Positions 1 to 41,433 of a DNA stretch of 64,000 nt are shown here, in pieces. The stretch comes from Selaginella moellendorffii (Eukaryota; Plantae; Lycopodiophyta), in assembly GCF_000143415.4 (NCBI RefSeq), contig NW_003314308.1, positions 124,001 through 188,000 on the forward strand, read 5' to 3'. Each line of letters begins with the position of its first letter. The first letter of the stretch is position 1. The position numbers were made by a program, and so were the translations under genes. The notes under the pieces were generated by a model. That model made no database searches and was not told where the DNA came from. It was given only the letters and a program-made list of their open reading frames with translations.

Positions 1-312
1 GAATTGAATTATCTTTTTTTGGCACACCTCTTTTAACATAGTGTTCATAACAAGCGTAAGTGAATTCCATCTAACTCCATTGCAAAGCCATAGATATATA
101 TTGTCTGGAGTCATGTCTCTAATGCATCCCATTGAGTTTATCCTTTGTTGCCATTGATTTCCAATATAACTCTCTCAACACTTTAGTTTTGTACTATGGT
201 GCTTAGAAGATTTGCATATGACTCAAAAGTAGGTTGAAGTCTAACCAATTCAATGAATTGGTGGGGCTCATACTTCAATTGTGTACAATACAAAGGTGCA
301 CAGTGTTGATGT

Positions 313-469
313 TTGGACTTGGAGTTCTCTCAAGAAGAGCATGCTGAAAGAGATTTGAGAATGTGGAAGTTGCAATTGCATATAGTAATATTTAGAATAA
401 CAATAGACACTTTCAATATTTTCCAATTATAATTGTTTCAAATTGGACCTGGAGTTCTCTCAAGAGGAG
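313..469. repeat. ~130-bp tandem duplication (unit 1 at 313-442; unit 2 starts at 443, is split by the LTR insertion and resumes at 2159-2272)
   Basis: ttggac(t/c)tggagttctctcaaga occurs at 313 and 443. gaaagagattt.agaat.tggaagttgcaattgcat...caat.gacacttt.aa.attttccaat.ataa occurs at ~346-442 and again at ~2165-2272. Confidence 0.8.
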
Positions 470-2153
470 TGTGAAACACAAATCCCTAAGCCCCAAAGTG
501 GAGCCGAAAGGGTGCCACATGGTAGTGGCCAAAGCGAAAGCCAAACAAGCAGAATATGTTTGGATTAAAAGCTTTAACTTGAAAGGTCGAAAGTGGGAGT
601 GGAACTCCTAACGAAATGCTCGAGGAACAAGCACGAAGCGAGCAATAAGTGTGTCTTTAGAAAAAAGACATAAGAGGACCAACACATGACATGTGGAAGT
701 GTCCGAGATGGAGTTCAAAAAGGAGTCCAAAATTGGAGTCCGAGATGAACCCAAGTTAGAGTCCGAGATGGAGTTCGAGATGGAGTCCGAGATGGAGTTT
801 GAAATGGAGTCCGAGATGGAGTCTAAGATGGAGTCCGAGATGGAATCTGAGATGGACTCGAGATGGAGTCTGAGATGGACCCGAGATGGAGTCCAAGATG
901 GACCCGAGATGGAATCCAAGATGGACCCGAGATGAAGTCCGAGATGGAGTTCAAGATGGACTTGAGATGGAGTCCGAGATGGACTCGAAATGGAGTCTGA
1001 GATGGACCTGAGATGGAATTTGAGATGGAGTCCGAGATGGACCCGAGATGGAGTCCAAGATGGACTCAAGATGGAGTCTGAGATGGACCTGAGATGGAGT
1101 CCAAAATAGACCCGAGATGGAGTCCGAGATGAAACCGAGACCGAGACTGAGACCGAGATCAAGTCCGAGTCTAAAACCGAGACCGAGACCGAGTCTGAGT
1201 CAAAGTCCAAGTCCAAATACTAATACAAGCTGTTGGGTGAAAGCCCAAAGCAATCGTCCCTCGGGGGGGGGGGGGGTTGCAGAAGGTTCAAAAGTATAGT
1301 AAAGAGAGTGTGGGGGTTGGAGCTTAGTAGAGCCAATTTGGTACCCAGGTGTTGGATGATGAGCTAACCACTGGGAAGTCCAAGAGTCGGCTCTAGTTCC
1401 CCTAGGAGATCAAATGATCAATGCTCCTAATCCAAGTGTGGATGGCACTACCTACTTGGATACCTGGCATGGCTTAACAGAACCTCACTCTAAGCCCATG
1501 GCTAGAGCACCCAAAGGCGGAAGGTGGGGAGAGTACCCAGGAGGCTCACGTAGGGCCACGGTGTTCCAAAATGTTATCTCAAAGTCCTAGACTATGAAGA
1601 GGAAAAAAAGCAATCCTTTGGTGTGGTGACTAAGGATGCAATCCTGTGGTAAAGAAGTCCCAAAGGATAGTGGGACTTAGTGGTCGAGCTTGTGGGCCTT
1701 GTCCCAGTGGTAGTGTTGGCAAACATGGCCATAGACAGAAAAGGGATTTGGTAGGGACTGTAAAAAAGATATTGGGGAAGGCTATTCTCCATGTCTAGGG
1801 GCATTCTAAGGATGCTAAGGAGTGGATCTGGGATGATCATTTATGGATAAATGACTCAATTTTTGAGAGATGGGACTATGATGTTGGTAGTGTTGGACCA
1901 CTAGTGTTACCAAGGTGAATGTCCTTAGCGTAATGGGCTGGTGTGTCGCTGGTACTTTGGGGTGTCAGTCTTAGGATTAGATATGTGAAGCACTTGGACC
2001 AAGTGCAAAGGTTGAGTGGTATGGATGCCATCTTCAAGGCTAGCAAACCCCAAGTCCTGAATAGGACTTATGGAGGTTGTGAACAAGACTCGTCCAAGTG
2101 GTTGGAGGGGTGGTTAAATGACTAAAGTAGAATAGAAAAATTAGTCACTTACA
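470..2153. mobile_element. Solo LTR of an LTR retrotransposon (1684 bp)
   Basis: Starts TGTGA at 470 and ends TTACA at 2153. Flanked by the perfect 5-bp direct repeat AGGAG (465-469, 2154-2158). Removing it restores the second unit of the flanking tandem repeat. No gag/pol recognised inside. Confidence 0.8.
703..1215. repeat. Minisatellite of 12-bp units (GAGATGGAGTCC / GAGATGGACCC variants) grading into 6-bp GAGACC/AAGTCC units, inside the solo LTR
   Basis: Periodicity is directly visible and explains the repetitive ORFs 608..1216 and 693..935. Confidence 0.95.
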
Positions 2154-3041
2154 AGGAGTTTATTGAAAGAGATTTAAGAATATGGAAGTTGCAATTGCAT
2201 GCAGTAACATTCATGTGAGAAGAGTAATAACAATGGACACTTTTAACATTTTCCAATCATAACCATTTCAAATTTTGAAATTTGTAAAAAGGGTTTCCAA
2301 GCATGGGGCAAAACTATCCAATGTATATTGTGTGCTACAGCTGAAGAATTGAAGTTTTCAGGGATTGAAAGCTTGTGCTCACTTAATTAAAAGTAGATTT
2401 GTGACAATTTTCTATATGCTCTAACCCTTTTGCAATGTTTGAGGTTTCTAGGTTTCTTCCTAGCATGGCAAACTGAAGAGGATTTTATGACTTCTTTGAG
2501 GCACAATAATGGATCCAATAGGGGACAGGACTGAGGATTCTATATGACGCCTCCTTCTCTCAAGGCTCGACAATCCCTTTAACAAGACAGCCTAAAACTA
2601 CTTCTAATGTTGTGCCAATCACCAAGGGGAAAGGTCCTATTGAAGAAAGCGATAGCAAGGGATATGTTATTACTCGAGATGCAAACGAGGACGATTTCAC
2701 ATATTCAAAGGGTGATTTTGGTTCTACTATGAAATAGGTTGAGAGTTCCTCAAGCAAGGATGGGCATCATGTAACACCTAAGCTTGATAGTTTTGATTTA
2801 GATCCTAAATTAAGAGCTACTTTGGAAGCTATAGTGATTACCTTTGGTGAGGCAAGCATAAGCCAAAAGGGTACCAAGGGCTGCAAGTGCCTCTGATGGG
2901 CATTTGTGGAATATTTTAAATATTCTTACTTTTAACTTTGCCAATGAACTGAAAAGAGTCTCTTTCAAAGTGTGAAGCATATTTCAAGACAATTATCTAT
3001 TTTTATTGTGAAAATATCTAGATTATGGTACTTCCACAACA

Positions 3042-6000
3042 TCAGCCTAATCCATACAAGCTCTTTGGATTTTGGAGTGCCTAATGGATCTTGTGTTTGG
3101 TCCACTCTATTGATAGGTATGTTAAAGGGAAGAAAACTTCTCAAATGCATGTGGAGAACCTGGGAAATCGAGTAAATGATGTACTCTATCTTTTAACTTG
3201 GATCCAAATAAGCTCTCCCAGTTAGAACTCTAGAGAATCAATTGCAAAGTGATGGAACTTAAATAACTCTTTCAAGCTCATATCTATAAAATGTTCAAAC
3301 ATACAAAAATTTTAGTTGTTTGTGAAAGTAAATAGCTACCTCGAATGATGTGCACAATCCAGCTGTAGAAGTTCTCTCCAAAGTCCTAATCAAAGATCAG
3401 GCAATTGATGAACTCTACGGGAAGAATGATCATCCTTACTTGGAAGACCTATGTCCCAATGAGTGAAAGCCCACTTAGCAATGCTAGACTCTTGTAAAGC
3501 CTCTAACGAGCTTTTATGCACATTGAGTGTTGGAAGCTATTTCAAAGTAAGTCTCCCACTACATTTGGCTTGATAAATAGGTAATGCAGACCACTGTAGC
3601 CATGCATGCCTCCACAACCTGCTCATAACCTTCACCAAGTTCGGTGAGTCTAGACTCAAGCACTGCATTGTAGTTGGTAATTGCAGGGTTCTCTAAGATG
3701 GAATCCATAAACTTGCACCGATCGCCCTCCTCCTTTAGGTTTGATGCACCTTGCAATTGTTTGAGTGCATTCCATATATGTGGTGCGCATGCCTTGAGGT
3801 CCATCTCATATAGTCCTCCTTGGGCAAATTGTCAGTTATTCTTGTTTGGAACTTCTCTGATTGCAATTGCCAATGTTGCAATTATACACCTGCGAGATAC
3901 CTGTGCATTACATTCAAATGCTTGGAATAGCAACCAGCCCACAAAGACAACCTGTGCATATAGAAATGAGGAGCATATAAAACTTGTGCTTTAGACTTAA
4001 CTTACTACATCCCATTGTTCTTGTCGCAACGTCTTAAAATGCACTAGCATCCTAGGATGCCAATGCGTGGCTCCTTCCCTAAGCACAAACAGTCCATGCG
4101 TTTGTAACACAAAGTTACTCTAGTGAGCCAAATGAAAATTAGATTTACTGATCCTGGAATTTAGCGAACAGCCTCCCTAATGGCTTTTGCATGTGGCCCA
4201 CCTGCATCTATTGTGGCTTCCTCCCACACCAAAGCTCCTCCAATCTCAAACGCATAGACCATTTTGTAATTCAGTGTGCCGAGATTAGTATTGAAAACGA
4301 ATTGGAAATAACTAAATTCATTGTTTAGTGCAATCTGGAAGGATAAGTGAGGGAACTCCAATTCATAGGCAATCCATTACTTACCAGAATGTGAGACAAC
4401 CTCAAATGTGTACAAGCAAGTTTGTATGGTTAAAGCATGGCCTTTTCAATGTAAAAACGGGAGAACTTACAATACAGTGTTTCAGCAGTGTCAAATAGTT
4501 CTTTTAATTGTTGTGTAGCCGCCCAATTCCTACGTAGGTCCCTGCACAAAACAATAAGATGGTACTAAGTGCTAAGAAATAGATACACATACCTTTTCTC
4601 AAAGAACCATGCTATTGTGAACTTAACAATTGAAGGAGGCATATTGATACTTCCTTCAGCAAGGAGTTGTTAGATTGTGTTGTCACAAAACACACCCTTA
4701 TACTATGCTTCTAAAAGGCCAAGTTGAAGGAAAACACTCTCCCAATCCTACTAATGAGGCATGGCTTGGCTGAAAAGCATGTGTCAAAGAAATATTTCAC
4801 CACCAGCCCAATGGAATTTAGAGTGTCTAGCAACAGCATTTAGCATCTCCTCATCACTTGTGCTCTTCACACCAAAGCAACCAAGAAGTTTGTGTTTCAG
4901 CCACTGCACATGTAAGAGAATTTCAGCATCCTCTTGTGCCCTCACCTCAAGGGCTGTAATGGCATCTTGTAAGGCAGAAACCTCCTCATGTTGCAACATG
5001 ATGAAGTTGGCACTATCTTGAGTGGTTAACTGAACAGCTTCATTAAATGCATTAGTGGCATCAATCCATTGTTGTTGACACTCCAACAATCTACATGCAA
5101 ACATTAATTCCATTTCGAATGGCACAATTTTCAATTATCTTACTCTACTGTAAAAAAGTTGTCAAGCAACTCCATAAAAGTAAGTGGAGTGGAGCTACTT
5201 CCCTCTAGAAAGGGGGGTGGAGGCACAGCATGGTCTTCAAGGCCTCCGCCATCACTGTCATATACTACCATTGGCCTATCTGCATTTAAAAATTAGAAAA
5301 TGAAAGAAATACTCATTTATATTAATGCTTTTTACCAGCCACATGGCCTAGAGCCACTATCTCTGGTAACAAGGATGTCTCTAGAGATCCTTGGTGCAAT
5401 TCATCCCCACCATCACCTTGTTCTTCGACTCCGGTGATGTCCATATTGTTTTGTGTGGGGAGAGTTTCTTTTGGTAATGAAAGAATGTCTTCTTCATCCA
5501 TAGAGTTTTCTTCTTCATTATTCTCATCTTGGTTTGGTTCCTGCGTGGCTGGCCTCGGGAGAAATGGCTCACCAAGGGATCATCATTTGCAATCAAGGTA
5601 TTTGTACTAGCTACAATTGCAAAGACCACAATATATATTTGTGAGAAGGGAAATTTAAGAAAATAATGACTTACGTTCACAAACATCCTTCTCCTTGAGT
5701 GCTCGAGCCTACTTTTGATAACTTAGCTAATGTTTCTCAGTAAGATGCTCCATAACATTGTATAGGTATATTACTATTGCCTGGTTACCATTAGCCTTGT
5801 TTGCTATAGCTCCCCATAATATTTTAAGAGGCCAGTAGTAAGGTCGAATAGAGCTGAGGCAAATTTTGTAGACTCGGCATGGGCCTCACCACTATTGGAC
5901 TACCTTGCACGCTGGACAAATGCTCCTGGGTTGGTTATAGATGAAGGTTGGATTCCTAAGGCTTGAAGTGATAATAGAATCACATGTTGGGCCATGTCAG

Positions 6001-6850
6001 GCTGGAAAGGAATATTGGAGTATAAGCCACCCCATATGAGACACTTTAGGAGGTCCACTATTAGCTTGTCAAGTTCCATCACCTTCACAAATGGCTCTCT
6101 TTTCCACCCATAGAAGTGTATATGCCAAGTCTTCGGGATTGCAATCCACTTGGTGACAAGAACTGTAATGAACAGCCGGGGGACCAAGGGTGTCGTAGAC
6201 AATATCCCACCAATAACTTTGGATTGACTACCATGACATCCATAACGATAAGATAAGGACTGCCAATTGTTATTGGCATAGGTGTGCACTACAGCCACAA
6301 GCGGTAAGAGAGTCTAGCACAATGAAACAAAAATGAGTCAAACAAATCCAAAGAAAAAAAAATTGAAGAGTGCATGGGGTCATGTTATACCTGTGGCTCA
6401 CATGGCAGCCCACCTTGAGGGTCAACTTGAATATATCTGGATGTCGAAGCTCCACTAAATGATGATGTCGATCCTTGGGAGTAGTTGTGGAATGCTGGTG
6501 GGGAACTATAAGCTCGCTAGTGTGGCGACATTGTCAACTCACCCTACGCAGAAAAACACATGGAAAAAAGATGGGTACAAATGAAAAACTTACCGAGCTA
6601 CACCAATTATTGCTTCGAAAGGTAGATGGCTAGGTATTGGCACTTGCATCGGTAGATGGAGTTGCAAGAGTTGTAGCGGCTGGTGGAGTTGCGAGGCTGG
6701 TAGAAGTGGCACTATATGGGCTTCCATGAGCATGTTCTGTAGTTGGTGTTGGTGGCAGCATTCCAAATTGAACAACACCGTGGGCATGAGGCATCCAGAC
6801 TTGCTCATTTTGGACGCTCGGGCTACTGCTTTCTAAGGAAGGCAAAGAGA
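3042..6850 (-). pseudogene. Decayed multi-exon HECT-type E3 ubiquitin ligase gene (transposon cargo)
   Basis: Minus-strand pieces in HECT order: EEATIDAGGP (~4194-4222), VVFVGWLLFQAFE...LYEMDLKACAPHIWNALKQL (~3750-3950), and C-lobe RFPRFSTCI*EVFFPLTYLSIEWTKHKIH*ALQNPKSLYGLG* with catalytic-type Cys at 3147-3149, an aromatic residue at -4 and stop at 3042-3044. Many in-frame stops. The 5' end is approximate. Confidence 0.72.
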
Positions 6851-7499
6851 ACGAAACATGCTAAAAGTTCCACATATGTTGCAATGTATGCAATATTAGG
6901 TGGCGCTCTACTTGCTCAAATGCAGTCATGAGCTGTGGATGGGATGCTGTTAGAGTTGATGTCCCTACTGCGGAGCTTGGAAAATCAAGTGGCTGGCATG
7001 TGTCTCAGGAGACTGTTGGCTGTACTGATTGTGGAATATCGAGTGCTTAGCTGCGTGCTCGCAAGGAATTTCCTGCATAGTATCTACTGCTGTTGAGGCA
7101 TGTGGTGTTCTTGCTTTGAGCCTAAAAACCACAAAGGATTGGTTATGCAAACTTGATCGAGGAAAAGCTACCCACCATCGCAACTGTGGCACTCTTGCTT
7201 AGGCAGTGGTCCTACAATCGGGGGAGTGTGCAATAGAAGCTTTGCCTCCGGTTAGATGACGTGAATTGATTGGAAGAATGAACGAACCATCAACAAAATC
7301 ATGTCATAAAATGAAATTTCCCTGTATCCAAGGCACAATTAATATGGGTGGGACTTGGTGTAAACCCTAATCCTAAATGTGGGAACCCTAAAATTGAAGA
7401 AATCAAGAATTGAATTTAAATTTGAAATTTACACTAAAGAACACTCAGTTTTCTCCAAGTATAGCTAAGTATAATTTTTTTAAAGCTCGTCACTTCACT

Positions 7500-9183
7500 G
7501 GTGTTGCTGTAGTAAGGCACTTTTGATATAAAGTGGTAAATCTACACTCGCAACATCAGCCATTGCACACTCTATTGTTAGATCCAAATGAAGTAGATAT
7601 TGCTTGTCCAAGTTGAGTCCCTCTTGATGCATTAAAAATGCCTAGTTTCGAACAGTGCCAAGACTTGTAAGGTAGCCAAGCACAACGAAATAGATTTTAA
7701 AAAATTGTTCAATTCTTGCTCTAAAGATTACCTCTAACAGAGTTGCACCTTCGATATTGGACAGAAATGGTCCAAGAAGGTCTTTAATATTTTTTCCACC
7801 AACAGCCGGCATAATCCTACAAAAGCACAATTTATAAAGAATTCTGTAACATTACCAAAATTCTTACCCAAACTTTCATTCCATCGGTTAAAATAAGTTT
7901 GTAGGAACATGAGATGGTCTAAAGTAATCACCACATCAATACAGACGGACCTTATAGAGGTTCTAGGTTGCAACCCAGTGTGAAATATCTTTATTGAGGT
8001 ACAGAGTAAAGACACAACATAGACTCTAGTTGTGCCATGGATTAGATACATAAAAAATTCTTACATCTTCTATAAGCTCAAAAAGTGTTTATAAAATCAC
8101 ACCATGCTCAAAGAGCTCTCTCCACAAATGCTTTATATGTTGTAAAACAAATTTGATTTAGTCCTTATTTGGAAAAACTCTAACACTGTGAGCACTTGGT
8201 TACATGTTGATGTCCCATATATGAAGCTCCTAGCTGCAGGACCCCAACAATAGACCATGTCCTTCTCAACCTCATTGTGCTCTGGAGCATTGTCGCTCTG
8301 AATGTGTTTGGGCCTTTCAAATTGACAAACAACCTACACATATGTGTTGAATATTGCATGAGATTCTTTGGAGGTAGCTAGCTTGCAAGCTACAATATAG
8401 TGAGTTGCTTCGCAAATAATGGCATGTACATAGAAACCATAAGTTACAAGCTTGCAATATGCTACAATAAACATGTTACCACATATGTTAACAAAAAAGC
8501 ATAAATGAAAAAATACTCACAATCCATATAGCAAAGTGCATAAGCCTCTTTGTTCCTATAAATCCTCAAATCCTTGTCATGTGCCTTTGTTCCAGCTTAG
8601 TTGGATCATGAGTGGCTAAGGCCTCACGAATTTGGCGTCGGCTAAACCAATATCCTCTAGTTCGATAGCTAGATCGGGAATTGATAATCCCCCAGTTTGT
8701 GCCACCTTGATTCATGGCTTTGTTAGTTCGAATGTGATGAAGTACCTCTTCGGGTGGTACTCTGTAATATACACCTCTCCAATTTGGATTGACAAGCTAT
8801 ATGTATTTGTACAATATTGCCTTGGAAATTCTAAGATAGCATGCGAGGTAAGCAATAGTCTTAGTCTCGAGGATCTTCAGATGCATCCAGGTGCCAAACG
8901 CGGCTGGACTACCGAATCCCTTCGATTGCAAAAAATTATAGAAGGGCTAAAAACATGTAAATCATGAATCTAGAAGGCTGGAAATTAAGCAAACCTCTAG
9001 GACAACATTATTGTCACTATCCACACCTAAACCATAATCCGAATCACTAAAATTGAATGAAAGGTTATCCACTTTGTTTTCCTCCACATCTTTTAGTAAA
9101 CCTGGAAGAAAAGGTTTTAGTGACACAAATTTGAAGTGAACTAGGGAAGGAACTATACTTATGGTAGGAACTTGAAAGTCCAT
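7500..9183 (-). pseudogene. Decayed intron-containing DDE transposase/integrase of the eukaryotic IS3/IS481-like (IS3EU-type) family
   Basis: Spliced minus-strand translation gives HTH-like TIAYLACYLRISKAILYKYI; GGTNWGIINSRSSYRTRGYWFSRRQIREALATHDP; RIYRNKEAYALCYMD|SYCKLVTYGFYVHAII...FERPKHIQSDNAPEHNEVEKDM...ARSFIYGTSTCNQ|HIKHLWRELF; and DVSNPWHN*SLCCVF...WVAT*NLYKVR. These match the family pattern WHxDGxHKL..HGxIDG..PxxxRSDxGxEN..SFIxGxSxxNQRIERLWRD..WNxHxxR. Intron at 8462-8520. Ends approximate. Confidence 0.82.
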
Positions 9184-9682
9184 AAATAGCAATCAAGTAG
9201 TAAATCAAAACCATTTCCAACATTGCCCACAAAAACATTTGAAACCAATCACTAACAAACCAAGTTACTTTCCACATTTGCTACCAAGAAACATGCTAAA
9301 TAACAAAGCACTAAAGCAGCATGCTAAGGCAAACAGGCATCTTTTAAACCCTATGACCTAATGAATCCCTATGTCATGGGGTCAAATTTGATGATATATA
9401 GCATCTATGTATAGCACATTATTCATATTAGGATATCATCAACCCATGGGGCCAGCATTCATGGGGTATCCATGAGGCATCCAAATGACATTTAATGCCA
9501 AATTAATAAAAGACTGCCACATAAACACTATATTGTGAGTGAAATTTGCCATAGTAACACTCACCTTTTTCCGAATTGCACGCCATACGGTGCGTATTAT
9601 GATCGTTGCGCCACGCGTGGTCGCATAAACCCTAAAAATTCTTTCTTTCTTTCTTTCCAACAGTCTAAATTTCGGGGGGACG

Positions 9683-12223
9683 ATGGCAGTGAGCGACAAT
9701 TCTTCCTCCGATGAAGACGACGAGCCATTCGTCTCGATCGGCAGGGCCACCAGCAGCGGCAGCGACAGCAGCAGTAGCGGCGGCAGCGTCGTTTGCAGTG
9801 GCCGGACAAATTCCAAGATCAAGAGGAGCAGCGATGCCGGGCGGAGGATCCAGCATGGAAGGCTCTACGACTCCACGAACGGGATTACTTGCCACTGGTG
9901 CCGCCAGAAAACAGTGGAGGACAAGGTGTGCTGCAGCCGCTGCCCCATCAGCTTTTGCGGGAGCTGCCTCGCCAATCGCCATGGCGAGATTCTTGACGAG
10001 CAGATGGAGGAGGGCGTGCGCTGGGTCTGTCCCAAGTGCCGCGGCGGCTGCGGCCCTGGCTGCGTGGATTCTTGGTAAGATCGATCCATCTCCATCGCCG
10101 AGATCATGCATTTCATTTCTAGGGTATCATCTCACGATCCATTCTTTGCAGCTGTAACTGTGGCCCCTGCCGCAAGGCGCAAGGATTGGCGCCGACGGGC
10201 GTCCTCAAGCACGGAGCTGCGAAGTCCGGATTCAACAATGCGCATGACTACTTGATCCATCTCGAGACTGGTGAGTCCGTGAGAGAGATCGCACAGCGCA
10301 AGCTCGGGAGGGACTGGATCAAGCCCGGCAGCACGGTTCGTTACGACACCGAGCCGATCTTTCGGAGGAGGATCATCCGGACTCTTGACGATGAGGATTG
10401 CACGCCAAAGAAGCGGCGGACCTGCGAGGCCGAGGAGAGGACGCCTCCATCGAGTGTGAGTGTTCTTTTCTTTTCTTTCTCTAAACTTTGGCGATTTTCT
10501 TTCTGGCTTTAGATGCGTGGAGCGCTCAGGGGAGCACAGCTACGGCGGTATCTTTCTCAGCTAGCGTCTGACAAGGCCGCGGATAAAGCCATCGCCGAGG
10601 AGGAGGACGAGGAGGCCAGTGGCAAGGACGTAGCTTCGCTTGGAAGTAGAGTAAAGCTCCGGCTTTTTCAGTCGCGTGTCAAGGGCGAGAAGATGGACCA
10701 CGTTGGGACGAGCTCGATTGCTGCTGCTGCCCCAGCGATCAAGACAGAAAAGCCGGCAGACGAAGAGCAAGGTAAGGTTTTCAGTCGCCAAAAGCAAGTG
10801 AAGATGGAAAAGGATAGTGAAGCGTCGGCTCCTGCTTCCCAGAGCCACCAACAAGCCGGGGAGCGCTTCCGAGAGATCTTCTCTGAGGCAAAGCAGACGA
10901 AAGAACGAGAGGAGAAGGATGAAGTTAACGTTGGTGCTCGAGTCAAGGCCGAAAAGGAGGATAGTCCGAGGACAGGGAGCGAGCAGAGGGCAACTGTTGC
11001 GATCGTCAAGAACGAAGAAGGTGGTGACAAGAAGACGATCAGAGCAGGCATTAGTAGTGAAGAGGGGCGGGTTTCTAGAGGAGAAACTCCTAGCGACACC
11101 CAGGACGAACGAGGAATCGAACACGATAGTGGCAGCAGGGAGAATACACCCGCACCGTGGAGCCGCGCTAGGAACCTGGAGAGAGCCCGCGAGCACGCTC
11201 AGGTGTTCCATAGAGCTTGCCGGAGGAACACTAGAAACAGGAGTAACTATTCGCACTTGGTGGATTCCGCAGCGAGCGAGAGTGAGGAAGAGGAGGAGCT
11301 GGAACCCGACAGCGATGAGAGCTCGAGACGCACCCAGAGTAGCTCGCTCACCGAGCAGCAGGACTCCGACTCGGACAATGGGACAAAGGTACGTTTTTTT
11401 TTCTTTTCTTTGTTAAGCTGTTTGTTTGATCACCAGGATGAAGGATTTGTTCTAGGCCGAGACGCTGGACTTTTGTATCGCCAGCAGCTTGAGAAGGAGC
11501 TTGAGAAGCCCTTCGATTCTCAGCAGCTAGAGAGCATGCTCAAGCAAGCGAGCTGTAGGAAGCCAGTTCTTCGTCACAGGGACACAAGGCGCGGGAGTAT
11601 GCCAATCGCTACTACTGTCACAGCTCCTTCCTATCTCGACTATCATCCAGGTGATAAGAAAAAAACACTGCCTGCTATAGCACGAACTTTCGTTTGCTCA
11701 TTGCTTTTTGTTTGCATGGACAGATCTTGCGGAGAAAGTAGAAGCGGCTGAAGATGAGGAAAAGCTCCGCCTCTTACGTGGTTTCTTCTTCTGGCTTATG
11801 GTAGCGTGGACTTCTTCATGGCGATAAAAAAAAGTGTTCCGTTCTTTTGCAGAAAACCTGCGATCCTGGAGCTTTCAAGCCATGGGTGACTCTCTCAGAC
11901 CAGGAGAAAGGCAGCGACGAGTGCTACTTTGATGATCCAGACTGCGAGGTAGACGGATCTACGTGGAAAATTGTTGCTTCACTAACTTTGTGGTTCATTA
12001 GATTACTGCAGTGGTGGTGCCACTGGACGAGCAGCGAGAAGCAAAAAACCTGCTGAGGCAGCGAAAAACTTCGATCGCCCCAGCGCTTTCAGATGAAAAC
12101 GAAGAGACTCCGACTGGGCACGCCAAAGTTAAGGAAGAGAAACTCTCTGATGAGGGAGGTGCCAAAGAGAAAATCGCCGGTGGAATTGGCGTCAAAGTTA
12201 AGGAGGAGAAGCTCACAGAATGA
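9683..12223 (+). CDS. zf-4CXXC_R1 (CDCA7-type) zinc-finger protein with acidic linker and a C-terminal plant conserved domain (SYLDYHPDL...LLRGFFFWL...GAFKPW)
   Basis: YDSTNGITCHWCRQKT..CSRC..FCGSCLANRHGE..WVCPKCRG..CNCGPCRKAQGLAPTGVL..GFNNAHDYL. In-frame GT-AG introns join about 7 exons (e.g. intron ending at 10512). Confidence 0.8.
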
Positions 12224-12463
12224 GAGAGAGAATTCCGCGCAGGATCGAGACACCCTGAAGATATAAAATTTTTGGTAAGTAGCAGCAGTAGCTGGCTAGG
12301 CGGATTTAAGTTAAGTCACTGTGTAATGTTACGCAAGAAAGGGAGAACAAAGAATGATTTTTTGTTACTTGTAAAGAGCTTACCAAGAACTGGTTCCAGG
12401 CATTGGATATTTTCTTCGCGAGAAGATCCATTGTTGCGATGAATTCTAAAAAGTTCTTCCTTT

Positions 12464-12943
12464 CTAAGCAGGCTCCTCGTAAGTATCCTTTTTGTGAGCC
12501 ATGTTGGCGGCTTCATGGAATGTATGGTTGAAGAGACCGGCAATAGCTCTAAGGAAGAAAGGAAAGACCAAGTTTCAATCAAGCAAGCGAAAGAAAAGCG
12601 ATAGAAAACTCACAATTCTTTCATCTGTTGGATCTTCTCTGGATCACTCTCGTTCATGTTCTTCCGGAATTGCGCGCGCACCATATTGACAATGCCGTCA
12701 GTGTTGCCGTGCTGAGAAGATTCGCAAGAAACGAGCCGATCGATTTAAATCAAGAGAGCTTAGTACCTTGTTGCCAACGTATTGCGCCCGACGAATGCAT
12801 TCCCTGTAGAGCTGCGAAATCGCGAAACAATCAATCACAAGCTAGAATTCTTGCAAATTTCCACTCACACGCTTGGCGCTCTTGGTAATGTGCTTGGGAA
12901 TCGCTGATGCCGCAGCTTGCGCCTTCGCCGCGGCCGCGTCCAT
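12464..12943 (-). CDS. Small LYR-motif (complex I LYR family) protein, 4 exons
   Basis: Spliced: MDAAAAKAQAAASAIPKHITKSAKR|LYRECIRRAQYVGNK|HGNTDGIVNMVRAQFRKNMNESDPEKIQQMKE|LAIAGLFNHTFHEAANMAHKKDTYEEPA*. Canonical splice sites; LYR motif plus downstream Phe. Confidence 0.85.
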
Positions 12944-13215
12944 CGATCAATCACTGCTAGGGTTCTAGCCAATATTTCACCTGACGGAATCTTCTATTTC
13001 ACGGAATGTACTCGGGTCAAGTTCCGTCAGTCAGAATATGCTTCGACTTTATTGCGCGTTGGTAGTGTGTTTCTTTCCTCTCTGGACGGACGGGATCACG
13101 TGTCGACGTTGCATCCAACGGCGCGACGCGAGGAGATGCTCGTCAAGAGATGGCGGGGCGTGAGGGATCGAGGATTCACACAATGCGATGCGCCTAGCTA
13201 AGGAGCGTCTTGGCT

Positions 13216-16076
13216 ATGGCCGCTGCCGCCGAGTGCTACGATGTTACCAGGGATTGCGATGAGGCGGAGCAGGCGCTCAGGTAATCTCTCATCGAAATTT
13301 CAGCTCCCAGGACAGGATCGTGAGAAATTTCTTGCAAAATCGCAGACTCCTTCTCCAGGGGAAATTCGATGAAGCTGAGGATATGATCGTTGCTAGGGTC
13401 AATGCCAGGGACAGCGTCGCCGGAGCGGTGCCGATCTTTACTCATTGCCATGCGGTCATCTTGTTCGCCAAAGCTGGAATCTCCGGAGCTGAGGAAGACA
13501 GGTAGATTTCTTTCTTTCTTTCCTGTGAAATCCTCCAAACAAAGATTGAAAGAAAATGGTTGGACAGGAAGCAAGCCATGGAGAAGCTCGGTACCGCCGC
13601 AAGCATGGCAGAGAATCTCATTCCAAAGCAAGGTTGGGTGCAAAGCATCGCCACTTGGGGAATGGGATACTTCTCTTCTCCATCTCCCAAATCGGATGAT
13701 ATTAGCGAAGAAGAACTAAGCTGGTATTCGCTTTTGCCATTCCTTTTCTTTCGTGAGCTTGATCTTCCATTCTCAAACCAGCCGAATCATTGAAGCAGAG
13801 GCTACATTTCTTTCAGCATTGCTGTGCTTCTTTGAAGAATCCATCGCTGCGTTTTTTAGAGTACGTTTATACTGACCTTCATCACGATCAAAGGCTAACT
13901 GATCTCTCGTGTTACAGGCAGCTTTGCTTATAAGAAAGGCGATCAGAGGTTACAAGCATTGTCACGCCATCATCAAGAAACAGGTTGATCGCGCTCTAAA
14001 GAGTTTCGTTCCTGATCATACATATGAACGCTTGCAGGAATACTCTAACAGAAGCGAACATAACGTCAGTGCAGTAAAGCTTGGCTTTGGTGGCTTCAGC
14101 CTTGCAATCTCAATGCTACCACCGAAAATGCTGCGGCTCCTTTCTGTTTTAGGATTCCCGTCGGATCGAGCTGCCGGACTCAATTCGATCAACGAGAGCC
14201 TGAAAGGTGGAGGTTTGCGAGCACCCCTGTCCGGCGTGTATGGCATTTCGTTTCTTTTCTAATTTCTAGCATCGGTGGCTCACGACATTTTTTTTCTGGT
14301 TTCCAGACTGCTGCTCTCGTACCATGTAATACTACCAGCATTTTTCTCTACTCCACAAGTATGCAAATATGTTCTGGCAGGCACGATGATTCTCTCGCAT
14401 TTCGTATAATTGCAGGAGCGTGAAGACCATGTTGCATCTGCGGTGGAAATTCTAAATTTTATGGAAGAAACTTATCCTAAAAGTTTCTTCCTCAGGTGCG
14501 TATATTATAGAGAACGCTGCGCGTATAATGAATTTGTTTTCAGCTTCTACGAAGGCCGACTGAAACGTCTCAATGGCGACCTTCAAGGCTCCATGGAATG
14601 TTTCCAAAGCCTCGAAAGGGTAAATGGTTTTTCTAAATTTTCCAAGTTTTGACTTTACTTCCAGGGGCTGAAGCTGAGCAGTACTTCACACTTTTTCAAA
14701 TTACGTCATGCATGGGTGTATGAGCTTGGATTAGGCCACATGCTGCTGCTTCAAGTTAGTAAATCGAAGTTCTGTATCGATTTCGCTGACCACTGTTTTG
14801 CTTGGTGACCAGTGGGAAGAAGCGGAGAAATACTGGATTGAGTTGAAACAGGACAGTGCGTGGTCCCGTGCGTTCTTTGCGTATTTACACGTAATTTAGA
14901 CAAGAGAGAGCGTTCGTGGTTAGCTGAGCACCTGTCTTCGCAGGGAGTGTGCCTTTCCATGCGCGGTGAAGCGAAGCTTGCAGCAAAGGAGTTTGCGGAG
15001 GTTGCAGTTTTTACGTGTGCTGGTTACCTTTTAACGTCCGCATGAACAGGTGCAAGGCCTGTTGCGAGGAACCATGTCTGGCCGGGTCTTAGCCGAAGAA
15101 CAATATGCTTCAAGAAAGGTATCTTCTATATTTCTTTTATCTTTTTTTATTTGTTGTTGTTACAAGGTTAAAGATCATGCTCTTGATACCATGGAAGGAG
15201 CACAGGGCGTACAAGGACAATTATGTGGAGTAGAGTTTTTGTACTTGTGGAACTCGTTTCCTCAGGTATGCCATTCTCTCGTTTCTTACCTGTTCTCACT
15301 TTCTCTCACACAGATGCCGAAGGAGGAGCTTGAGGCTGTTGTACATATTATTGACAAAGCCGAAAAGAGCCTTCGAAGTAGTCACCGTGAGAGTGCTATT
15401 AACTTGGAAAAGGAGGTATGTTAAGACAAGAGAAAATGCATAGCAATAAGGTACATGCAGGACGAGGAGGAACCGGACGATTATGTTGCTATTTGCAATC
15501 TCATCAAGGGCACTGCTCTCCGTGAACAAAGAAAACTTGTGGAGGCGCACTCTTGTCTGGACTTGGTGAGGTATATATATCCGTGAACTCGTGGCTACAC
15601 TCGTGACTACACTGCTCTTGTTTGCAGGGAAGATGACATGTACGTGGAGTCCGAGTTGTTTGTGATCCCAATGGCAGCCTACGAACGCGCCCTGCTGCTG
15701 ATGTACGAATACAACGATGACCAATCTCATCCGCTCAAGCTCATCTCCAACGTAAGATCTATTTCCATTGTTTTATGAACTTTGTGTATCTCGGGTGCGC
15801 ACAGGCAAAGAAAGAGCTTGATACTGCGGAGGGCTTTAAGCGAGATTACAACTTCTTGTGGCGGCTTTTAGGCCGCGTTCACGCTGCTCGTGGAGCATTG
15901 AAAAGCATAATCGGAGAGGAGGTACTCTTCTTTTTTTAGAGTTTAATTTGCTATAATACTGCTTACTCAAGCAGGGAAGCACGAACTCGGACACGAGTAC
16001 CATTACAGACAACGACGACGAGAAATGGGAAGACTGCATAGACGAAGTGGACGAAACATTTTTTATGTCACTGTAA
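13216..16076 (+). CDS. TTC39/Iml2-like tetratricopeptide-repeat protein, multi-exon
   Basis: AVKLGFGGFSLAISMLPPKMLRLLSVLGFPSDRAAGL..GGGLRAPL, EFLYLWNSF and YNFLWRLLGRVHAA match TTC39 hallmarks. Many short GT-AG introns. Confidence 0.8.
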
Positions 16077-16235
16077 TGTGAGCAGTGAGTGCTTCCATCT
16101 TGATTCCTTTGTCTTGATGCCAACAGTCTGGTTTTTGTGATGTAGCCCAAGATCACACCGTCATCTATAGATCAATAACGCGCGCTACCAATAGAGCCGT
16201 GGCCCGGCGAGCGACAGTCCCGTCTCGTTACTAAG

Positions 16236-17309
16236 CTACTTCTCCAATAAGTTGCTGGCCATCATGCGCTTAAACTCGTCAAAGTTCACCTGGCCATCGC
16301 CGTCCGCGTCCACAGCTTTGATCATCCTTCGGCAGTCCGCCAGCTTCACGCCCCCGTCTCTCAGTCCCAAGCTGTTCAGCACCGCCTGGAGCTCCACAAC
16401 CGTGATGAACCCGTCCTTGTTCTTGTCAAAGACGGAGAAGGCCTCTCGCAGATCCTGCTCATCACCGTCCCTGGCCCTGTGGTGCTGATCATCGTAGTAG
16501 ATGTTGCTGTAGAGCGCCAGGAACTCATCAAAGTCGACGAAGCCATCGCCGTCATTGTCCACGGCCACCACCATGCTCTCCAGCTCCGACCTCGACATCT
16601 CGAATCCCAGCTTCTTCATCGTGTTGCCAAGCTCCTCGCAAGAGATCTTCCCGTCACCATTCTCATCAAACGTCTCGAACATCTTGATCAGCTCCTCCCG
16701 CTCGGCGAATGGCTCCAGCCGCGACTCGGCGCTCACGAAACTATCGCACGACTCTACGCTCCTCTCAGAGAAGGTGCTGGATCGGCTGCAAGCCGGTCGG
16801 CTCCGTGTTGGTAAGCCTTGCTCGTCGTCGTCCTCCTCATCCATCTTGTGTTCTTCAGCTCCGTTGGAGAGAGCGTTCGGAAGCTTTTCAGCTGCGGAAG
16901 CTCGATCCTCCAAGAGCTCTCCAGTTTGATCGGGAAACTCTTCCGCTTGGCCCGAGAACTCCCCAGCCTCTAGAGTTTGCTCTTCGGTGTGACCTCTAGC
17001 TGGTAAAACTTGTTCTCCTTCGTTGCTACTGTTCTTCCATCGCAGTACTTCTTCGTGGAGACTGCTATCCCCTGTTCTTGACAAACTTCCATGATCTGGG
17101 TAGTGGTCGTCGCTGGAATACCCTGCGCGTGAGCAATTGGCTGGGAGGAGAGCGTCTACGAAGGGGACCAAGACGTTTGTGGCCTCCACCGCTACATCCA
17201 CTGCGTCACTCTCCTCCGAGACCCCCGGATCCAGCACTTTGTTCTCCAAATCCAGCGCGGTCCTGTCCGAGATAACAAGATCGCAGTTGCGCGTGTCGTC
17301 GCGGTCCAT
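16236..17309 (-). CDS. Calmodulin-like protein (4 EF-hands) with long acidic N-terminal extension, intronless
   Basis: EF loops DENGDGKISCEE, DNDGDGFVDFDE, DKNKDGFITVVE, DADGDGQVNFDE. The true start codon is uncertain. Confidence 0.9.
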   Translation of the reverse strand: MDRDDTRNCDLVISDRTALDLENKVLDPGVSEESDAVDVAVEATNVLVPFVDALLPANCSRAGYSSDDHYPDHGSLSRTGDSSLHEEVLRWKNSSNEGEQVLPARGHTEEQTLEAGEFSGQAEEFPDQTGELLEDRASAAEKLPNALSNGAEEHKMDEEDDDEQGLPTRSRPACSRSSTFSERSVESCDSFVSAESRLEPFAEREELIKMFETFDENGDGKISCEELGNTMKKLGFEMSRSELESMVVAVDNDGDGFVDFDEFLALYSNIYYDDQHHRARDGDEQDLREAFSVFDKNKDGFITVVELQAVLNSLGLRDGGVKLADCRRMIKAVDADGDGQVNFDEFKRMMASNLLEK

Positions 17310-17930
17310 CGCAGAGAAAACCTAAACCTCGTACCGATAGATCGATCGCTTCTTCTTCCTCTCGCCAAAATATCACTCCTGGCAGCAATGCCAATGCCGC
17401 GCTCGACACGAGTAAGCGAATGGAGCGAAGAAATTTCCCATTCTCACCTCGTGATCGCGTGACTCGTCGTGAAAGCGCCCGCGCTCTCCCTTTGTGGTAC
17501 CAAGAATCACGCGTCTCTCGCCATCAAGCCAGCATCTCATTCTCTTCTCTGCTCCACTTTAGAATCGATTGCTTGGTATTTCTTTCTAACAGTTCCTCGC
17601 GGCCGGGCTAAGGCTTTAATGCCTGTCCTTAACCGAATATGCCTGCCCTTGACTGGGGCTGACATGGCAAGTGGGCGCCACGTGTACGGTTGGATGGATG
17701 AACGGATTGAGACCGTCGATTGACCAAAAATCAGGATGGATGGACGGATTTGAAACTGGGATTTTGTGCACTGTCAAGGACCGCGTAAGAACCTTCGCAG
17801 CCGAGCGATGGCTAGGAATCGACAGTGGGGGGCGCGTGCTTTAGATTCTCCTTGGAATGGATTGTAGCCCTTTTTGGTAGCACCGAGACTTGAGATGGGA
17901 TTTTGATCGTCTAGGCACGAAATACAGGTA

Positions 17931-19279
17931 ATGCGGTTTGATGCCGCCGAAATGGATCTAGCAGCGGCTTCTACCCTGGAGCCGGCCTTGCAATCGGCGT
18001 GGATCCAGAGATTGAAGAGAGGTAGCAGCAGGAAGGAGCATGGCGACGAGGGACTCCAGATTCCACTGGGAAAGCTCGAGCTGGGAGGTGAAAACGGACT
18101 GGAGATTGGGGGTTTAGAGACAAGTAGAGATCAAGTCCAGGCTATGAGCAAGGAGCTCCTCATCCGGATAAACAGCAAAGTCGGGCTGGATGAGAATGGG
18201 AAGGATTTTAATCCTGGAGCTAAGCTTTGCGCTATCCAACGCTCTCCCAGAGGATTTGGTTCTTTTCGCGTCAAGCTCTCGGGCGTCAAGTTTCGAAAGC
18301 CGCCGCTTCCTCCAGCGCCCAAAGCTGGCAAGGCCGACGCTGTGGAAGCCCACAAAAGAAAAGAGAGGATTGCGAGAATCCATGGCGTGGACGTGACACT
18401 CGAGCAGCAACACCGAAATGGCACGGATGGCAAGAGGAGAGATTTGCTGGCCGAGTTTGCGTTGCGCTTGGACATCAAAGAGAAGCCAACGCCTCTTGGG
18501 ACTTTTCACATTGTGGACAGGAAGAAGAACCCATCGCTGCGCAAGGACAGGAGGTTGGCCACCTTGGTCTCTCCAATTTCGGTGGCGGCAGCAGTGACGG
18601 AAGATCACGATGCGGTGGGATCGATTACAGCCAGCTTAACTTCCGAAGTGCTGAAGCTGGAAGCGTCGAGGCACAGCGCAGTTGGAGCTCGCACCGATCC
18701 TTCCTCCATGGAAGGCAATCTCTCGGAGTCGAGGACGCTCTCCACAACTTATTGCGGCAGCTCTCCTTATCCATGCCCCGCTCCCAGCTGGACTTGCTCG
18801 AGAGGATCCGAGCAACCTGAGAGTAAGTTCGTCAGTTTTTCTCATTTTGTTCTTAGACTTCTTACTGATTCTCCTCGCAGGACGTGACACGATCGAGCAA
18901 GAAGCCGAGGTATCTTTCAGCTTTCCCTTTGTTTGTTTGCTCTGATTCTTTCTTCTTTCCTCCTTACCAGGCCTGTTTTGCAACGGAAAAAAGACGGCGG
19001 GAAGCATCAGTGGCTTTGAGCAAGGAGATGGTACCTTCAACCGTAGTGAAACGAAGCAGAATTTCGGTAGGAGAGGCGACCTTGGCTGGACCCTGGCTGA
19101 ACAGATGGAGGGAATCTGGAGAAAGCAAGCCTGGTAAAGTTCAAAGCGTGACACAGGCATTGGGAAAGAAACAGACTTTGCTACATGGGTCGGAGCCTCC
19201 CAGTGCTGCAGCGTTTGCAATCGTTGGTGCTGCTGTGAGACAGCTCCAGTCCTACTCGCTGGGTCAGTCCACGACTTGA
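17931..19279 (+). CDS. Hypothetical protein, 3 exons
   Basis: A long GC-rich ORF is joined in frame by two GT-AG introns (~18823-18880, ~18910-18970) to ORF 18884..19279. No recognisable domain. Confidence 0.5.
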
Positions 19280-29323: not shown

Positions 29324-29356
29324 CGAATTGGAAGAACCCTAAAATATTTCACTATC

Positions 29357-29645
29357 ATGAGCAGGCCAAGGCCCGTCGTCAAGCTCGGATGCTCCGGCAA
29401 GTACTACATCACTCCTGATCCGATCGCGCAATCCTGGGACGCTCTCGGGCCGATGATCCCGTCCCAGGAGCATCGGCTATCAACAAACAGTCAGCTCCTT
29501 CGCTGGCACGGAAATATTTCGGCAGGATCGCTTGCGGCAGGAGATGGAGGCCGAGATCAATCGCCTCCAGATCGTGAGCAGCTCGCCAGAGCTCGTGCAA
29601 GGCTTGCTTTGCGATAGAGACGATGGTGATAATGTCACTGGAGAG
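29357..29645 (+). pseudogene. Deletion-riddled remnant of the UFL1 5' end
   Basis: Blocks match the intact UFL1 at ~41604-41730, 41766-41821, 41894-41935 and 42297-42343 (e.g. gaaatatttcggcaggatcgcttgcggcaggagatggaggccgagatcaatcgcct). Confidence 0.88.
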
Positions 29646-31613: not shown

Positions 31614-31620
31614 AACTTGT

Positions 31621-41331: not shown

Positions 41332-41433
41332 CCTGTGCCAACTTCAACGTTAGTTTGACCTGTTGTTAGCTTTAGGGTTTGTTATAAGACGCATCTTTCC
41401 AGAATCTAGGGTTTAAAGAGACGATAGCGAGCG

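What the first reader, a model, noticed from the sequence alone, without database searches (positions are those of the whole stretch)
3042..9559. Fossil two-gene transposon: IS3/IS481-like DDE transposase coupled to a HECT ubiquitin ligase in a land plant
Seen: hidden by stops and introns, the minus strand carries an HTH + integrase-core gene (D at ~8523, D at 8292-8294, E position in (R)I(E)(R)LWRE at ~8133). It is followed by a HECT gene with IDAGGP, the catalytic STC motif and the terminal YGLG*. Established: this integrase type (IS3EU-like) is known mainly from animals and fungi and is not a standard plant DNA transposon superfamily. Inference: the two genes travel as one element, and the HECT ligase could counter host silencing or regulate the transposase. 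My recollection that animal relatives also sit beside HECT ORFs is unverified.
Basis: partly seen in the sequence, partly recalled or inferred. Interest (0 to 1): 0.85.

Follow-up and report, generated by a model that had tools for sequence, protein, structure and literature searches.

The report
Dead GingerRoot transposon carrying HECT-like gene
This stretch is a long-dead copy of a many-copy cut-and-paste transposon of the known IS3EU/GingerRoot kind in the spikemoss Selaginella moellendorffii; what is unusual is that the family carries, besides its transposase, a very divergent HECT-type ubiquitin-ligase-like gene and a small RNA:DNA-hybrid-binding-domain gene.

Summary
On the minus strand there is a decayed DDE transposase: D at 8522-8524, D at 8292-8294, and the E codon now K at 8131-8133. 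Downstream lies a decayed gene with TIDAGGP (4194-4214), STC (Cys 3147-3149) and YGLG-stop (3042).

The two genes do travel together. The same order, between about 57-bp inverted ends (TATGG...CCATA) and 5-bp target duplications, recurs in full-length copies at several other S. moellendorffii sites.

- **Extent.** The element runs from 9587 past the window's left edge.
- **Insertion.** It is split by a 1684-bp LTR-like insertion at 470-2153.
- **Third gene.** A third gene on the plus strand (2288-2896) has an RNase H1-type hybrid-binding domain.

The HECT call rests on modest evidence. The intact last exon of sister copy L003 hits Pfam HECT at E 4.7e-4, below the curated cut-off, and all 60 protein-language-model neighbours are HECT clusters. 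The N-lobe was not recognised, and the structure models were too poor to use.

This transposase kind was already described in Selaginella and mosses (GingerRoot, 2019), so it is not new to plants. I found no report of the HECT cargo in searchable papers. This scan has found the same family before on other DNA of this genome.

The parts
1..9587 (-). Whole element as far as the window holds it. It is a dead copy of an 8.1-8.5-kb GingerRoot/IS3EU-like DNA transposon. About 321 bp, including the far inverted end, lie beyond the window's left edge.
   Evidence: blastn shows window 9587-2164 matching L002 9784-17205 at 88%, and window 469-21 matching L002 17211-17655 at 91%. The allelic copy L009 runs on to its CCATA end 321 bp past the point that matches window position 1.
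9531..9587 (.). Terminal inverted repeat at the transposase-proximal end. Read on the minus strand it begins TATGGCGTGCAATTC.
   Evidence: All copies have the same terminus, and the reverse complement of the far end matches it over roughly 55-60 nt. Window 9587-9534 matches L002 18324-18271 in inverted orientation.
9588..9592 (.). Flanking 5 bp (CGGTG on the plus strand). This is one copy of the target-site duplication; its partner lies outside the window.
   Evidence: The allelic copy L009 has CGCCG and TGCCG at its two ends. L002 (TTTTT), L003 (GCTCA) and L001 (CTCTC) have exact 5-bp duplications.
7445..9280 (-). Transposase pseudogene, with helix-turn-helix-like N-terminal parts and an integrase-type DDE core. 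It has several stops, at least one intron, and the catalytic E changed to K.
   Evidence: It is colinear with gene models P0001, P0010, P0014 and P0020. Pfam rva_4 is passed by P0001 and P0010. The window pieces give rve at E 0.011 and rva_4 at E 0.002.
8131..8524 (-). Catalytic triad positions: D at 8522-8524, D at 8292-8294, and K (E in sister copies) at 8131-8133. In the gene models the spacing is D-57-D-35-E.
   Evidence: The spacing was counted on the P0010 and P0001 sequences. L003 keeps QRIEHLWRE.
3042..7177 (-). Gene 2 pseudogene. It has a Ser/Thr/Pro-rich N-terminal region, an acidic stretch, a roughly 190-aa unassigned region and a C-terminal HECT-like domain.
   Evidence: It corresponds to the annotated model P0021 (733 aa) in L002 and to a 747-aa model in L003. 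L003 keeps stop-free segments of 239, 189 and 89 aa. The window has 2 to 5 stops per exon.
3042..4262 (-). HECT-like domain. It includes TIDAGGP at 4194-4214, the candidate catalytic Cys at 3147-3149, a Tyr at position -4 and the stop at 3042-3044.
   Evidence: The intact homologous exon L003:15990-16247 hits Pfam HECT at E 4.7e-4, 20.3 bits, profile positions 252-301 of 306. The only PDB match is the HUWE1 C-lobe (E 0.52, not significant), in which the Cys lines up with the Cys of HUWE1's AHTCFN motif, which I take from my own knowledge to be the catalytic one. All 60 Atlas feature hits are HECT clusters, with a top score of 0.95.
2288..2896 (+). Gene 3 pseudogene, on the opposite strand and convergent with gene 2. 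It encodes a small protein with an RNase H1-type N-terminal hybrid-binding domain and an acidic, Ser-rich tail.
   Evidence: The homologous exon L003:16883-16996:- hits Pfam Cauli_VI (PF01693) at E 1.5e-5, 25.6 bits, above the cut-off of 21. The L002 exon scores 20.2 bits. The window copy has stops inside the domain (YIVCYS*RIEVFRD*).
470..2153 (.). Secondary insertion of 1684 bp with TG...CA ends and a 5-bp duplication AGGAG (465-469 and 2154-2158). It looks like a solo LTR and contains the tandem array at 701-1217.
   Evidence: It is absent from the allelic copy L009 and from all other copies. The tandem array was found. It is 73% similar to another repeat at L002 4-1626.
2164..2274 (.). One unit of an internal direct duplication of about 110-140 bp. 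The other unit is at 313-444.
   Evidence: Shown by self-blast. The same duplication is present in all copies.

Best explanation
Window 1-9587 is a non-functional copy of an autonomous cut-and-paste DNA transposon family of Selaginella moellendorffii that belongs with IS3EU/GingerRoot.

**Shown.**
- Full-length copies are 8.1-8.5 kb.
- They end in about 57-bp inverted repeats (TATGG...CCATA) and are flanked by 5-bp target duplications.
- They carry three genes in a fixed layout:
  1. An integrase-type transposase with D-57-D-35-E spacing.
  2. On the same strand, a protein of roughly 730-750 aa whose extreme C-terminus is HECT-like, with a Cys in the catalytic position and an aromatic residue at -4.
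  3. On the other strand, a small protein with an RNase H1-type hybrid-binding domain.
- This copy sits 95 nt upstream of the start codon of a zf-4CXXC_R1 host gene.
- It is present at the same site in a second, roughly 98.7%-identical version of the locus.
- It has been inactivated by many stops, a frameshift, an E-to-K change in the triad and an LTR-like insertion.
- Its decay is dominated by C-to-T changes in CG, CHG and CHH contexts.

**Inferred.**
- When the family was active, the transposase bound the inverted ends and moved the whole three-gene unit.
- The HECT-like protein acted as a ubiquitin ligase serving the element. The likeliest role is marking a host chromatin, repair or silencing factor, or the transposase itself, for degradation.
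- The hybrid-binding protein helped at RNA:DNA hybrids.
- These two accessory roles are guesses; nothing here tests them.
For: **Family membership and mobility.**
- Copies L002, L003, L006, L007, L009 and L010 are colinear over 7-8.5 kb.
- All copies have identical termini. Exact 5-bp duplications occur at three different sites, and duplications with one mismatch at the L007, L009 and L006/L010 sites.
- At least 10 annotated S. moellendorffii gene models derive from the transposase.
- 1145 contig pieces from a DNA run cover all 30 bins of the stretch.

**Transposase.**
- Pfam rva_4 is passed by P0001 and P0010.

**HECT-like gene.**
- L003's intact last exon hits Pfam HECT at E 4.7e-4.
- In the alignment to HUWE1 the Cys lines up with the Cys of HUWE1's AHTCFN motif, which I take from my own knowledge to be the catalytic one.
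- 60 of 60 Atlas neighbours are HECT clusters.
- L003 keeps a 239-aa stop-free segment in the N-lobe region.

**Hybrid-binding gene.** The L003 exon is above the curated Pfam cut-off.

**Death and decay.**

**Literature.** IS3EU and GingerRoot are described with TA..TA ends, and in Selaginella.
Against: - **HECT.**
  - The hit is below Pfam's curated cut-off (20.3 against 23.9 bits) and covers only the last 50 residues.
  - The 223-239-aa N-lobe ORF finds nothing in Pfam, PDB or the Atlas.
  - Both AlphaFold models were unusable, with pLDDT of 40 and 47, and Foldseek on the second gave noise.
- **Target duplication.** It is 5 bp here, not the usual 6 bp of IS3EU/GingerRoot.
- **Selection.** Substitutions among copies show no third-codon-position excess. 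So these copies give no evidence that any of the three genes was under selection.
- **Expression.** No RNA reads were laid from three RNA runs, but there was no positive control.
- **Phylogeny.** No tree with reference IS3EU or GingerRoot transposases was made.
Confidence: 0.85

Rival explanations
1. Gene 2 is a real gene of the element but not a HECT ligase. On this view the C-terminal resemblance (STC, LP-x-Y-like, aromatic at -4, IDAGG) is chance or convergence, and the protein has some other element-specific role.
For: - The hit is below the Pfam cut-off.
- The PDB match has E 0.52.
- Profile searches with A1 and A2 find no HECT.
- The N-lobe is not recognised by any tool.
- The structure models are uninformative.
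Against: - Two methods, the Pfam profile and protein-language-model features, point to the same family and the same part of it.
- The match lies at the very C-terminus, where HECT catalytic lobes always lie.
- The Cys and the -4 aromatic residue align with HUWE1.
- An IDAGGP motif lies roughly 300 residues upstream, close to the expected distance.
Confidence: 0.12
2. The HECT-like gene is passive cargo. On this view a host gene or fragment was picked up once by this Selaginella lineage, as GingerRoot and Pack-MULEs are known to do, and was of no use to the element.
For: - GingerRoot elements often carry acquired host gene fragments (PMC6839031).
- No selection signal is seen among copies.
- I could not check other species.
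Against: - It is a complete multi-exon gene with its own N-terminal regions, not a fragment.
- It is present in every full-length copy fetched.
- It is so unlike canonical HECT ligases that a recent capture from a host UPL gene is excluded.
- Earlier notes of this scan report the same pairing in other organisms; I did not check that claim.
Confidence: 0.12
3. The transposase relic and the HECT relic are two unrelated sequences that happen to lie side by side, for example by nesting of two elements or a host gene next to a transposon.
For: None beyond the fact that a single window cannot show linkage.
Against: The same order, spacing and orientation recur between the same inverted ends, with different flanks and target duplications, at several independent sites.
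Confidence: 0.01

Closest known systems
GingerRoot (Selaginella lepidophylla, mosses, some animals; Cerbin et al. 2019, PMC6839031) and the Repbase superfamily IS3EU, shown to be one lineage (Kojima 2023, PMC10045372)
   Same: - An integrase-type DDE transposase without an HHCC finger.
- A cut-and-paste element with terminal inverted repeats and TA...TA ends. The TATGG...CCATA here equals the TAYGG..CCRTA reported for fungal IS3EU (PMC12730594).
- The host is a spikemoss.
- The elements are several kb long and heavily decayed, as expected of methylated repeats.
   Different: - The target duplication is 5 bp in all scorable copies here, against usually 6 bp (6-8 bp in GingerRoot).
- The inverted repeats are about 57 bp, against 100-150 bp in S. 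lepidophylla.
- Neither paper mentions a HECT or a hybrid-binding gene.
- I did not make a tree with reference transposases.
Fungal IS3EU families that carry extra enzyme genes (TET/JBP dioxygenase and alpha-kinase; Kojima 2025, PMC12730594)
   Same: IS3EU-type elements with a fixed multi-gene layout, in which accessory enzymes are thought to help the element against host silencing.
   Different: The accessory genes differ: a HECT-like ligase and a hybrid-binding-domain protein here. The host kingdom also differs.
Plant MULE and CACTA transposons carrying a ULP1 (SUMO protease) domain gene. This comparison is from my own knowledge and was not checked here.
   Same: A plant DNA transposon that carries an enzyme of the ubiquitin-like modification system as a second gene.
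   Different: The transposase superfamily differs, and the enzyme is a protease that removes SUMO rather than a ligase that adds ubiquitin.
Canonical eukaryotic HECT E3 ligases (such as HUWE1 and plant UPLs)
   Same: A C-terminal catalytic lobe pattern: ...TGS-like strand, Cys in xSTC, LP-x-Y-like strand, a C-terminal helix and an aromatic residue at -4. There is also an IDAGG motif in the expected N-lobe position.
   Different: - It is extremely divergent, at 20 bits to Pfam HECT on the C-lobe only.
- The N-lobe is not detectable.
- It is encoded inside a transposon.
- It has no recognisable substrate-binding domains.

Membership tests
IS3EU/GingerRoot DNA transposons | Integrase-type (rve-like) DDE transposase | tested here: met
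   P0001 and P0010, copies of this family, pass Pfam rva_4 at 44 bits against a cut-off of 26. The window pieces give rve at E 0.011 and rva_4 at E 0.002. Spacing is D-57-D-35-E, and the triad is located in the window.
IS3EU/GingerRoot DNA transposons | Terminal inverted repeats with TA...TA ends | tested here: met
   TATGGCGTGCAATTC...GAATTGCACGCCATA in L001-L003, L006, L007, L009 and L010, and at window 9587. The repeats are imperfect and about 57 bp long.
IS3EU/GingerRoot DNA transposons | Target-site duplication usually of 6 bp | tested here: not met
   The duplication is 5 bp. It is exact in L002 (TTTTT), L003 (GCTCA) and L001 (CTCTC), and matches 4 of 5 in L007, L009 and the L006/L010 site. 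The 6-bp reading fails in all. The papers say 'usually' or 'mostly' 6 bp, so this marks a variant rather than an exclusion.
IS3EU/GingerRoot DNA transposons | Transposase groups with IS3EU/GingerRoot in a phylogeny | not tested
   No reference IS3EU or GingerRoot protein sequences could be obtained. All database relatives found were S. moellendorffii copies.
HECT E3 ubiquitin ligases | C-terminal catalytic lobe with the active-site Cys | tested here: inconclusive
   L003's last exon hits Pfam HECT at E 4.7e-4 with 20.3 bits, below the cut-off of 23.9, at profile positions 252-301 of 306. Its Cys lines up with the Cys of HUWE1's AHTCFN motif, which I take from my own knowledge to be the catalytic one, in an alignment at E 0.52. 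60 of 60 Atlas neighbours are HECT clusters, top score 0.95.
HECT E3 ubiquitin ligases | N-lobe with the E2-binding subdomain | tested here: inconclusive
   Only an IDAGGP motif in the right place. The 223-239-aa ORF of L003 finds nothing in Pfam, PDB or the Atlas. The model had pLDDT 40.
HECT E3 ubiquitin ligases | Forms a ubiquitin thioester and transfers ubiquitin | not testable with these tools
   This needs a biochemical assay on an intact family member.
RNase H1 N-terminal hybrid-binding domain (Pfam PF01693 Cauli_VI) | Match to the family profile above the curated cut-off | tested here: met
   L003:16883-16996:- gives E 1.5e-5 with 25.6 bits against a cut-off of 21, and L002 gives 20.2 bits. 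Only the first half of the domain lies in that exon. The second half (FxVSGFPxGMANWRGFYDFFEAQQW) was read by eye. The window's own copy at 2288-2520 carries stops.

The most novel reading that the evidence does not exclude
A lineage of IS3EU/GingerRoot cut-and-paste transposons carries its own HECT-type ubiquitin ligase and an RNA:DNA-hybrid-binding protein as conserved, working accessory genes. They would be used to mark host silencing, chromatin or repair factors, or the transposase, for degradation. That would be a transposon counterpart of the ubiquitin-system hijacking known from viruses and bacterial effectors.
Probability: 0.3. Interest if true: 0.75.

Novelty: new variant of a known kind. 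Interest (0 to 1): 0.55.

Why it matters
Plant DNA transposons are known to carry a few accessory enzymes, and fungal IS3EU elements carry TET/JBP and kinase genes thought to fight silencing. A transposon-borne HECT-type ligase would add the ubiquitin system to the tools that mobile elements bring along. It would also give a concrete protein to test for its host target.

In addition, the family extends GingerRoot/IS3EU with a 5-bp-duplication variant. The pair of allelic copies offers a clean natural measure of how much faster a methylated transposon decays than its flanks.

This particular copy is dead and adds no function to the host, apart from sitting 95 nt upstream of a gene.

Tried and rejected
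- **Window HECT pieces.** Pfam and PDB searches found nothing.
- **First homologue search.** The search for homologous proteins with a 66-aa window piece returned no candidate, because of the length filter.
- **Representative search.** Ten of the 12 hits were repeat-driven noise, for example RCC1 and repeat proteins.
- **Annotated model P0021.** This 733-aa model of gene 2 uses wrong frames in the HECT region and hits nothing relevant.
- **Atlas feature search.** The L002 177-aa and L003 223-aa ORFs gave no usable hit.
- **Profile searches.** Copy alignments A1 and A2 against PDB gave no HECT.
- **Structure.** AlphaFold2 on A1 and A2 gave pLDDT 40 and 47, too poor to use. Foldseek on the C-lobe model gave noise.
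- **Codon-position test.** There was no third-position excess among copies, so no selection signal.
- **RNA reads.** Three runs gave 0 reads, without a positive control, so this says little.
- **Metagenome scan.**
  - The single-protein scan gave two spurious short contigs.
  - So the pairing in other organisms could not be tested here.
- **Inverted repeats.** The search inside the window found no ends, because the second end lies off the window.
- **Consensus.** A majority state per alignment column was used inside scripts only, to polarise substitutions.
Full report
**What is there.**

- YALCYMD, with D at 8522-8524.
- IQSDNAPEH, with D at 8292-8294.
- HIKHLWREL, with the third catalytic position at 8131-8133. 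This is K here and E in sister copies.
- TIDAGGP at 4194-4214.
- FSTC, with Cys at 3147-3149.
- LYGLG followed by the stop at 3042-3044.

The region is full of stops, so the window's own pieces are weak queries.
- Two adjacent transposase pieces give Pfam rve at E 0.011 and rva_4 at E 0.002.
- The HECT pieces give nothing in Pfam or PDB.

**Relatives and the organism.**

A full scan of 1.8 billion representative proteins with window:8136-8333:- found two true relatives, P0001 (E 7e-17, 75% identity) and P0010. The other ten hits were repeat noise.
- Both relatives pass Pfam's curated threshold for the integrase core family rva_4.
- A word-based search found ten such proteins, all annotated as hypothetical proteins of Selaginella moellendorffii.
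- Their contigs come from assembly GCA_000143415.2.
- The D-57-D-35-E spacing was counted on P0010 and P0001.

**One element, three genes.**

Window 9587-2164 is colinear with L002 at 88% over 7460 nt. Window 469-21 continues the same copy.

*Copies.*
- Full-length copies are L002 (8541 bp), L003 (8458 bp, the best preserved), L009 (8056 bp), L010, and L006 and L007, each of which carries a secondary insertion.
- L005 and L008 are partial, and L004 is fragmented.
- L001 is an inversion-plus-deletion derivative, which explains the chimeric gene model P0010.

*Ends and target duplications.*
- All copies start TATGGCGTGCAATTC and end GAATTGCACGCCATA, with roughly 55-60 nt of imperfect inverted repeat.
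- Flanks differ between sites and show 5-bp duplications. These are exact in L002 (TTTTT), L003 (GCTCA) and L001 (CTCTC).
- They match 4 of 5 in L007, L009 and the L006/L010 site.
- L004, L006 and L010 share their flanks, so they are duplicates of a larger unit and not independent insertions.

*Gene layout.*
- The transposase and gene 2 lie in the same order in every full-length copy.
- A third gene lies on the other strand. Its first exon in L003 passes Pfam's cut-off for the RNase H1 N-terminal hybrid-binding domain (E 1.5e-5, 25.6 bits against 21).
- The rest of that domain is readable in L002 and L003.
- In the window this gene is at 2288-2896 on the plus strand and is decayed.

**Is gene 2 a HECT ligase?**

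L003 keeps long stop-free segments of 239, 189 and 89 aa. Evidence for HECT comes from its intact last exon, which ends ...FSTCTREVFFPLTYPSKEWTKHKIHRALQNPESLYGLG-stop.
- It hits Pfam HECT at E 4.7e-4 with 20.3 bits. That is below the curated 23.9, and it covers profile positions 252-301 of 306, the end of the catalytic lobe.
- Its only PDB match is the HUWE1 C-lobe, at a non-significant E of 0.52. In that alignment the Cys lines up with the Cys of HUWE1's AHTCFN motif, which I take from my own knowledge to be the catalytic one. The Tyr at -4 lines up with the Phe of HUWE1's terminal GFGL.
- All 60 nearest clusters by protein-language-model features are HECT clusters, with a top score of 0.95.

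Evidence against, or missing:
- The N-lobe ORF finds nothing.
- Profiles built from the copies find nothing.
- The two structure predictions were too poor to use, with pLDDT 40 and 47.

I therefore rate a HECT-type catalytic lobe as likely, at about 0.8, but not proven. It is certainly not a recent copy of a host UPL gene.

**State of this copy.**

The window holds the element from its end at 9587 down to position 1. About 321 bp, including the other inverted end, lie outside.
- A 1684-bp insertion with TG...CA ends and an AGGAG duplication splits it at 470-2153.
- Relative to L003, the window has 2 to 5 stops in each gene 2 exon and a 1-nt deletion near 3584-3588.
- The catalytic E is K.
- Substitutions among copies show no third-codon-position excess, as expected for neutral decay after insertion. 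So they give no selection evidence for any gene.
- Three RNA runs gave no reads, but without a positive control. A DNA run gave 1145 contig pieces across the whole stretch, with transitions far outnumbering transversions.

**An allelic copy.**

L009 (GL377619.1) has the element at exactly the same site next to the same zf-4CXXC_R1 gene.
- Its flanks are 96-99.8% identical to the window's in 500-nt bins, mostly 97% or more. The element is only 86-90% identical.
- Polarised against the other copies, 434 changes are private to the window, 443 are private to L009 and 214 are shared. About 84% of the private ones are C-to-T or G-to-A.
- The share of mutated cytosines is about 35% in CG, 26-31% in CHG and 10% in CHH. 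I read this as deamination of methylated cytosine in the three plant methylation contexts.
- L009 lacks the LTR-like insertion, so that insertion is younger than the split of the two versions.

**Comparison with what is known.**
- GingerRoot was described in S. lepidophylla, mosses and some animals, with TA..TA ends, mostly 6-bp duplications and 100-150-bp inverted repeats (PMC6839031).
- IS3EU and GingerRoot form one lineage (PMC10045372).
- Fungal IS3EU end in TAYGG..CCRTA and can carry TET/JBP and alpha-kinase genes (PMC12730594).
- The present family fits in its transposase type and ends. It differs in its 5-bp duplication, shorter inverted repeats and cargo.
- None of these papers, nor full-text searches for HECT with transposon terms, report a HECT gene in a transposon. 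Repbase itself could not be consulted.

**Earlier notes of this scan.**

After I had found the GingerRoot paper, the scan's notebook showed that the same family has been reported and followed up several times on other DNA of this genome, with the same reading. My tests agree with them independently on the transposon kind, the HECT-like gene, the hybrid-binding gene and the species.

**Verdict.**

The feature is a new cargo variant of a known transposon kind. This copy itself is a fossil.

Noticed in passing
window 5142-18186 versus L009 1-13088: The same insertion exists in a second version of the locus (GL377619.1). Host flanks are 96-99.8% identical in 500-nt bins, mostly 97% or more, but the element is only 86-90% identical, with about nine transitions per transversion. 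About 84% of the private changes are C>T or G>A, hitting 35% of CG, 26-31% of CHG and 10% of CHH cytosines. The transposon has decayed roughly nine times faster than its flanks, in the pattern of plant cytosine methylation.
   Followed up: yes
window 470-2153 (duplication AGGAG at 465-469 and 2154-2158): A 1684-bp insertion with TG...CA ends and a 5-bp target duplication, looking like a solo LTR. It is absent from the allelic copy L009, so it is younger than the split of the two versions. It contains the 12/81-bp tandem array at 701-1217 and is 73% similar to a repeat at L002 4-1626.
   Followed up: partly
window 9683-10078 and onward (+): A host gene with a zf-4CXXC_R1 domain (Pfam E 8e-18; CDCA7-like is my own label). 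It starts 95 nt from the transposon end, so the element sits in its promoter or 5' region in both versions of the locus.
   Followed up: partly
L004, L006, L010: Three copies on two scaffolds share the same flanking sequence on both sides (tagaagctgcttaaacaa... and ...caaacaaaattgtgg). They are duplicates of a larger unit, either a segmental duplication or an insertion inside another repeat, and not independent transpositions.
   Followed up: no
L001 8744-13159: A copy with an inversion of the transposase segment and a deletion of most of gene 2. The annotated protein SELMODRAFT_412061 (P0010) is a chimera of antisense gene 2 / gene 3 sequence and transposase exons.
   Followed up: partly
window 3832-3834 and homologous codon in L002, L006: The window, L002 and L006 have a stop at the same codon, where L003 has Arg (NEDD-R-RLARGG). 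This looks like parallel CGA-to-TGA decay at a CpG, or a shared subfamily mutation.
   Followed up: no
window 29174-41557: Earlier notes on this window mention a duplicated head-to-head gene junction and an intact Crinkler-type NTPase-nuclease gene. They are unrelated to this finding and I did not examine them.
   Followed up: no
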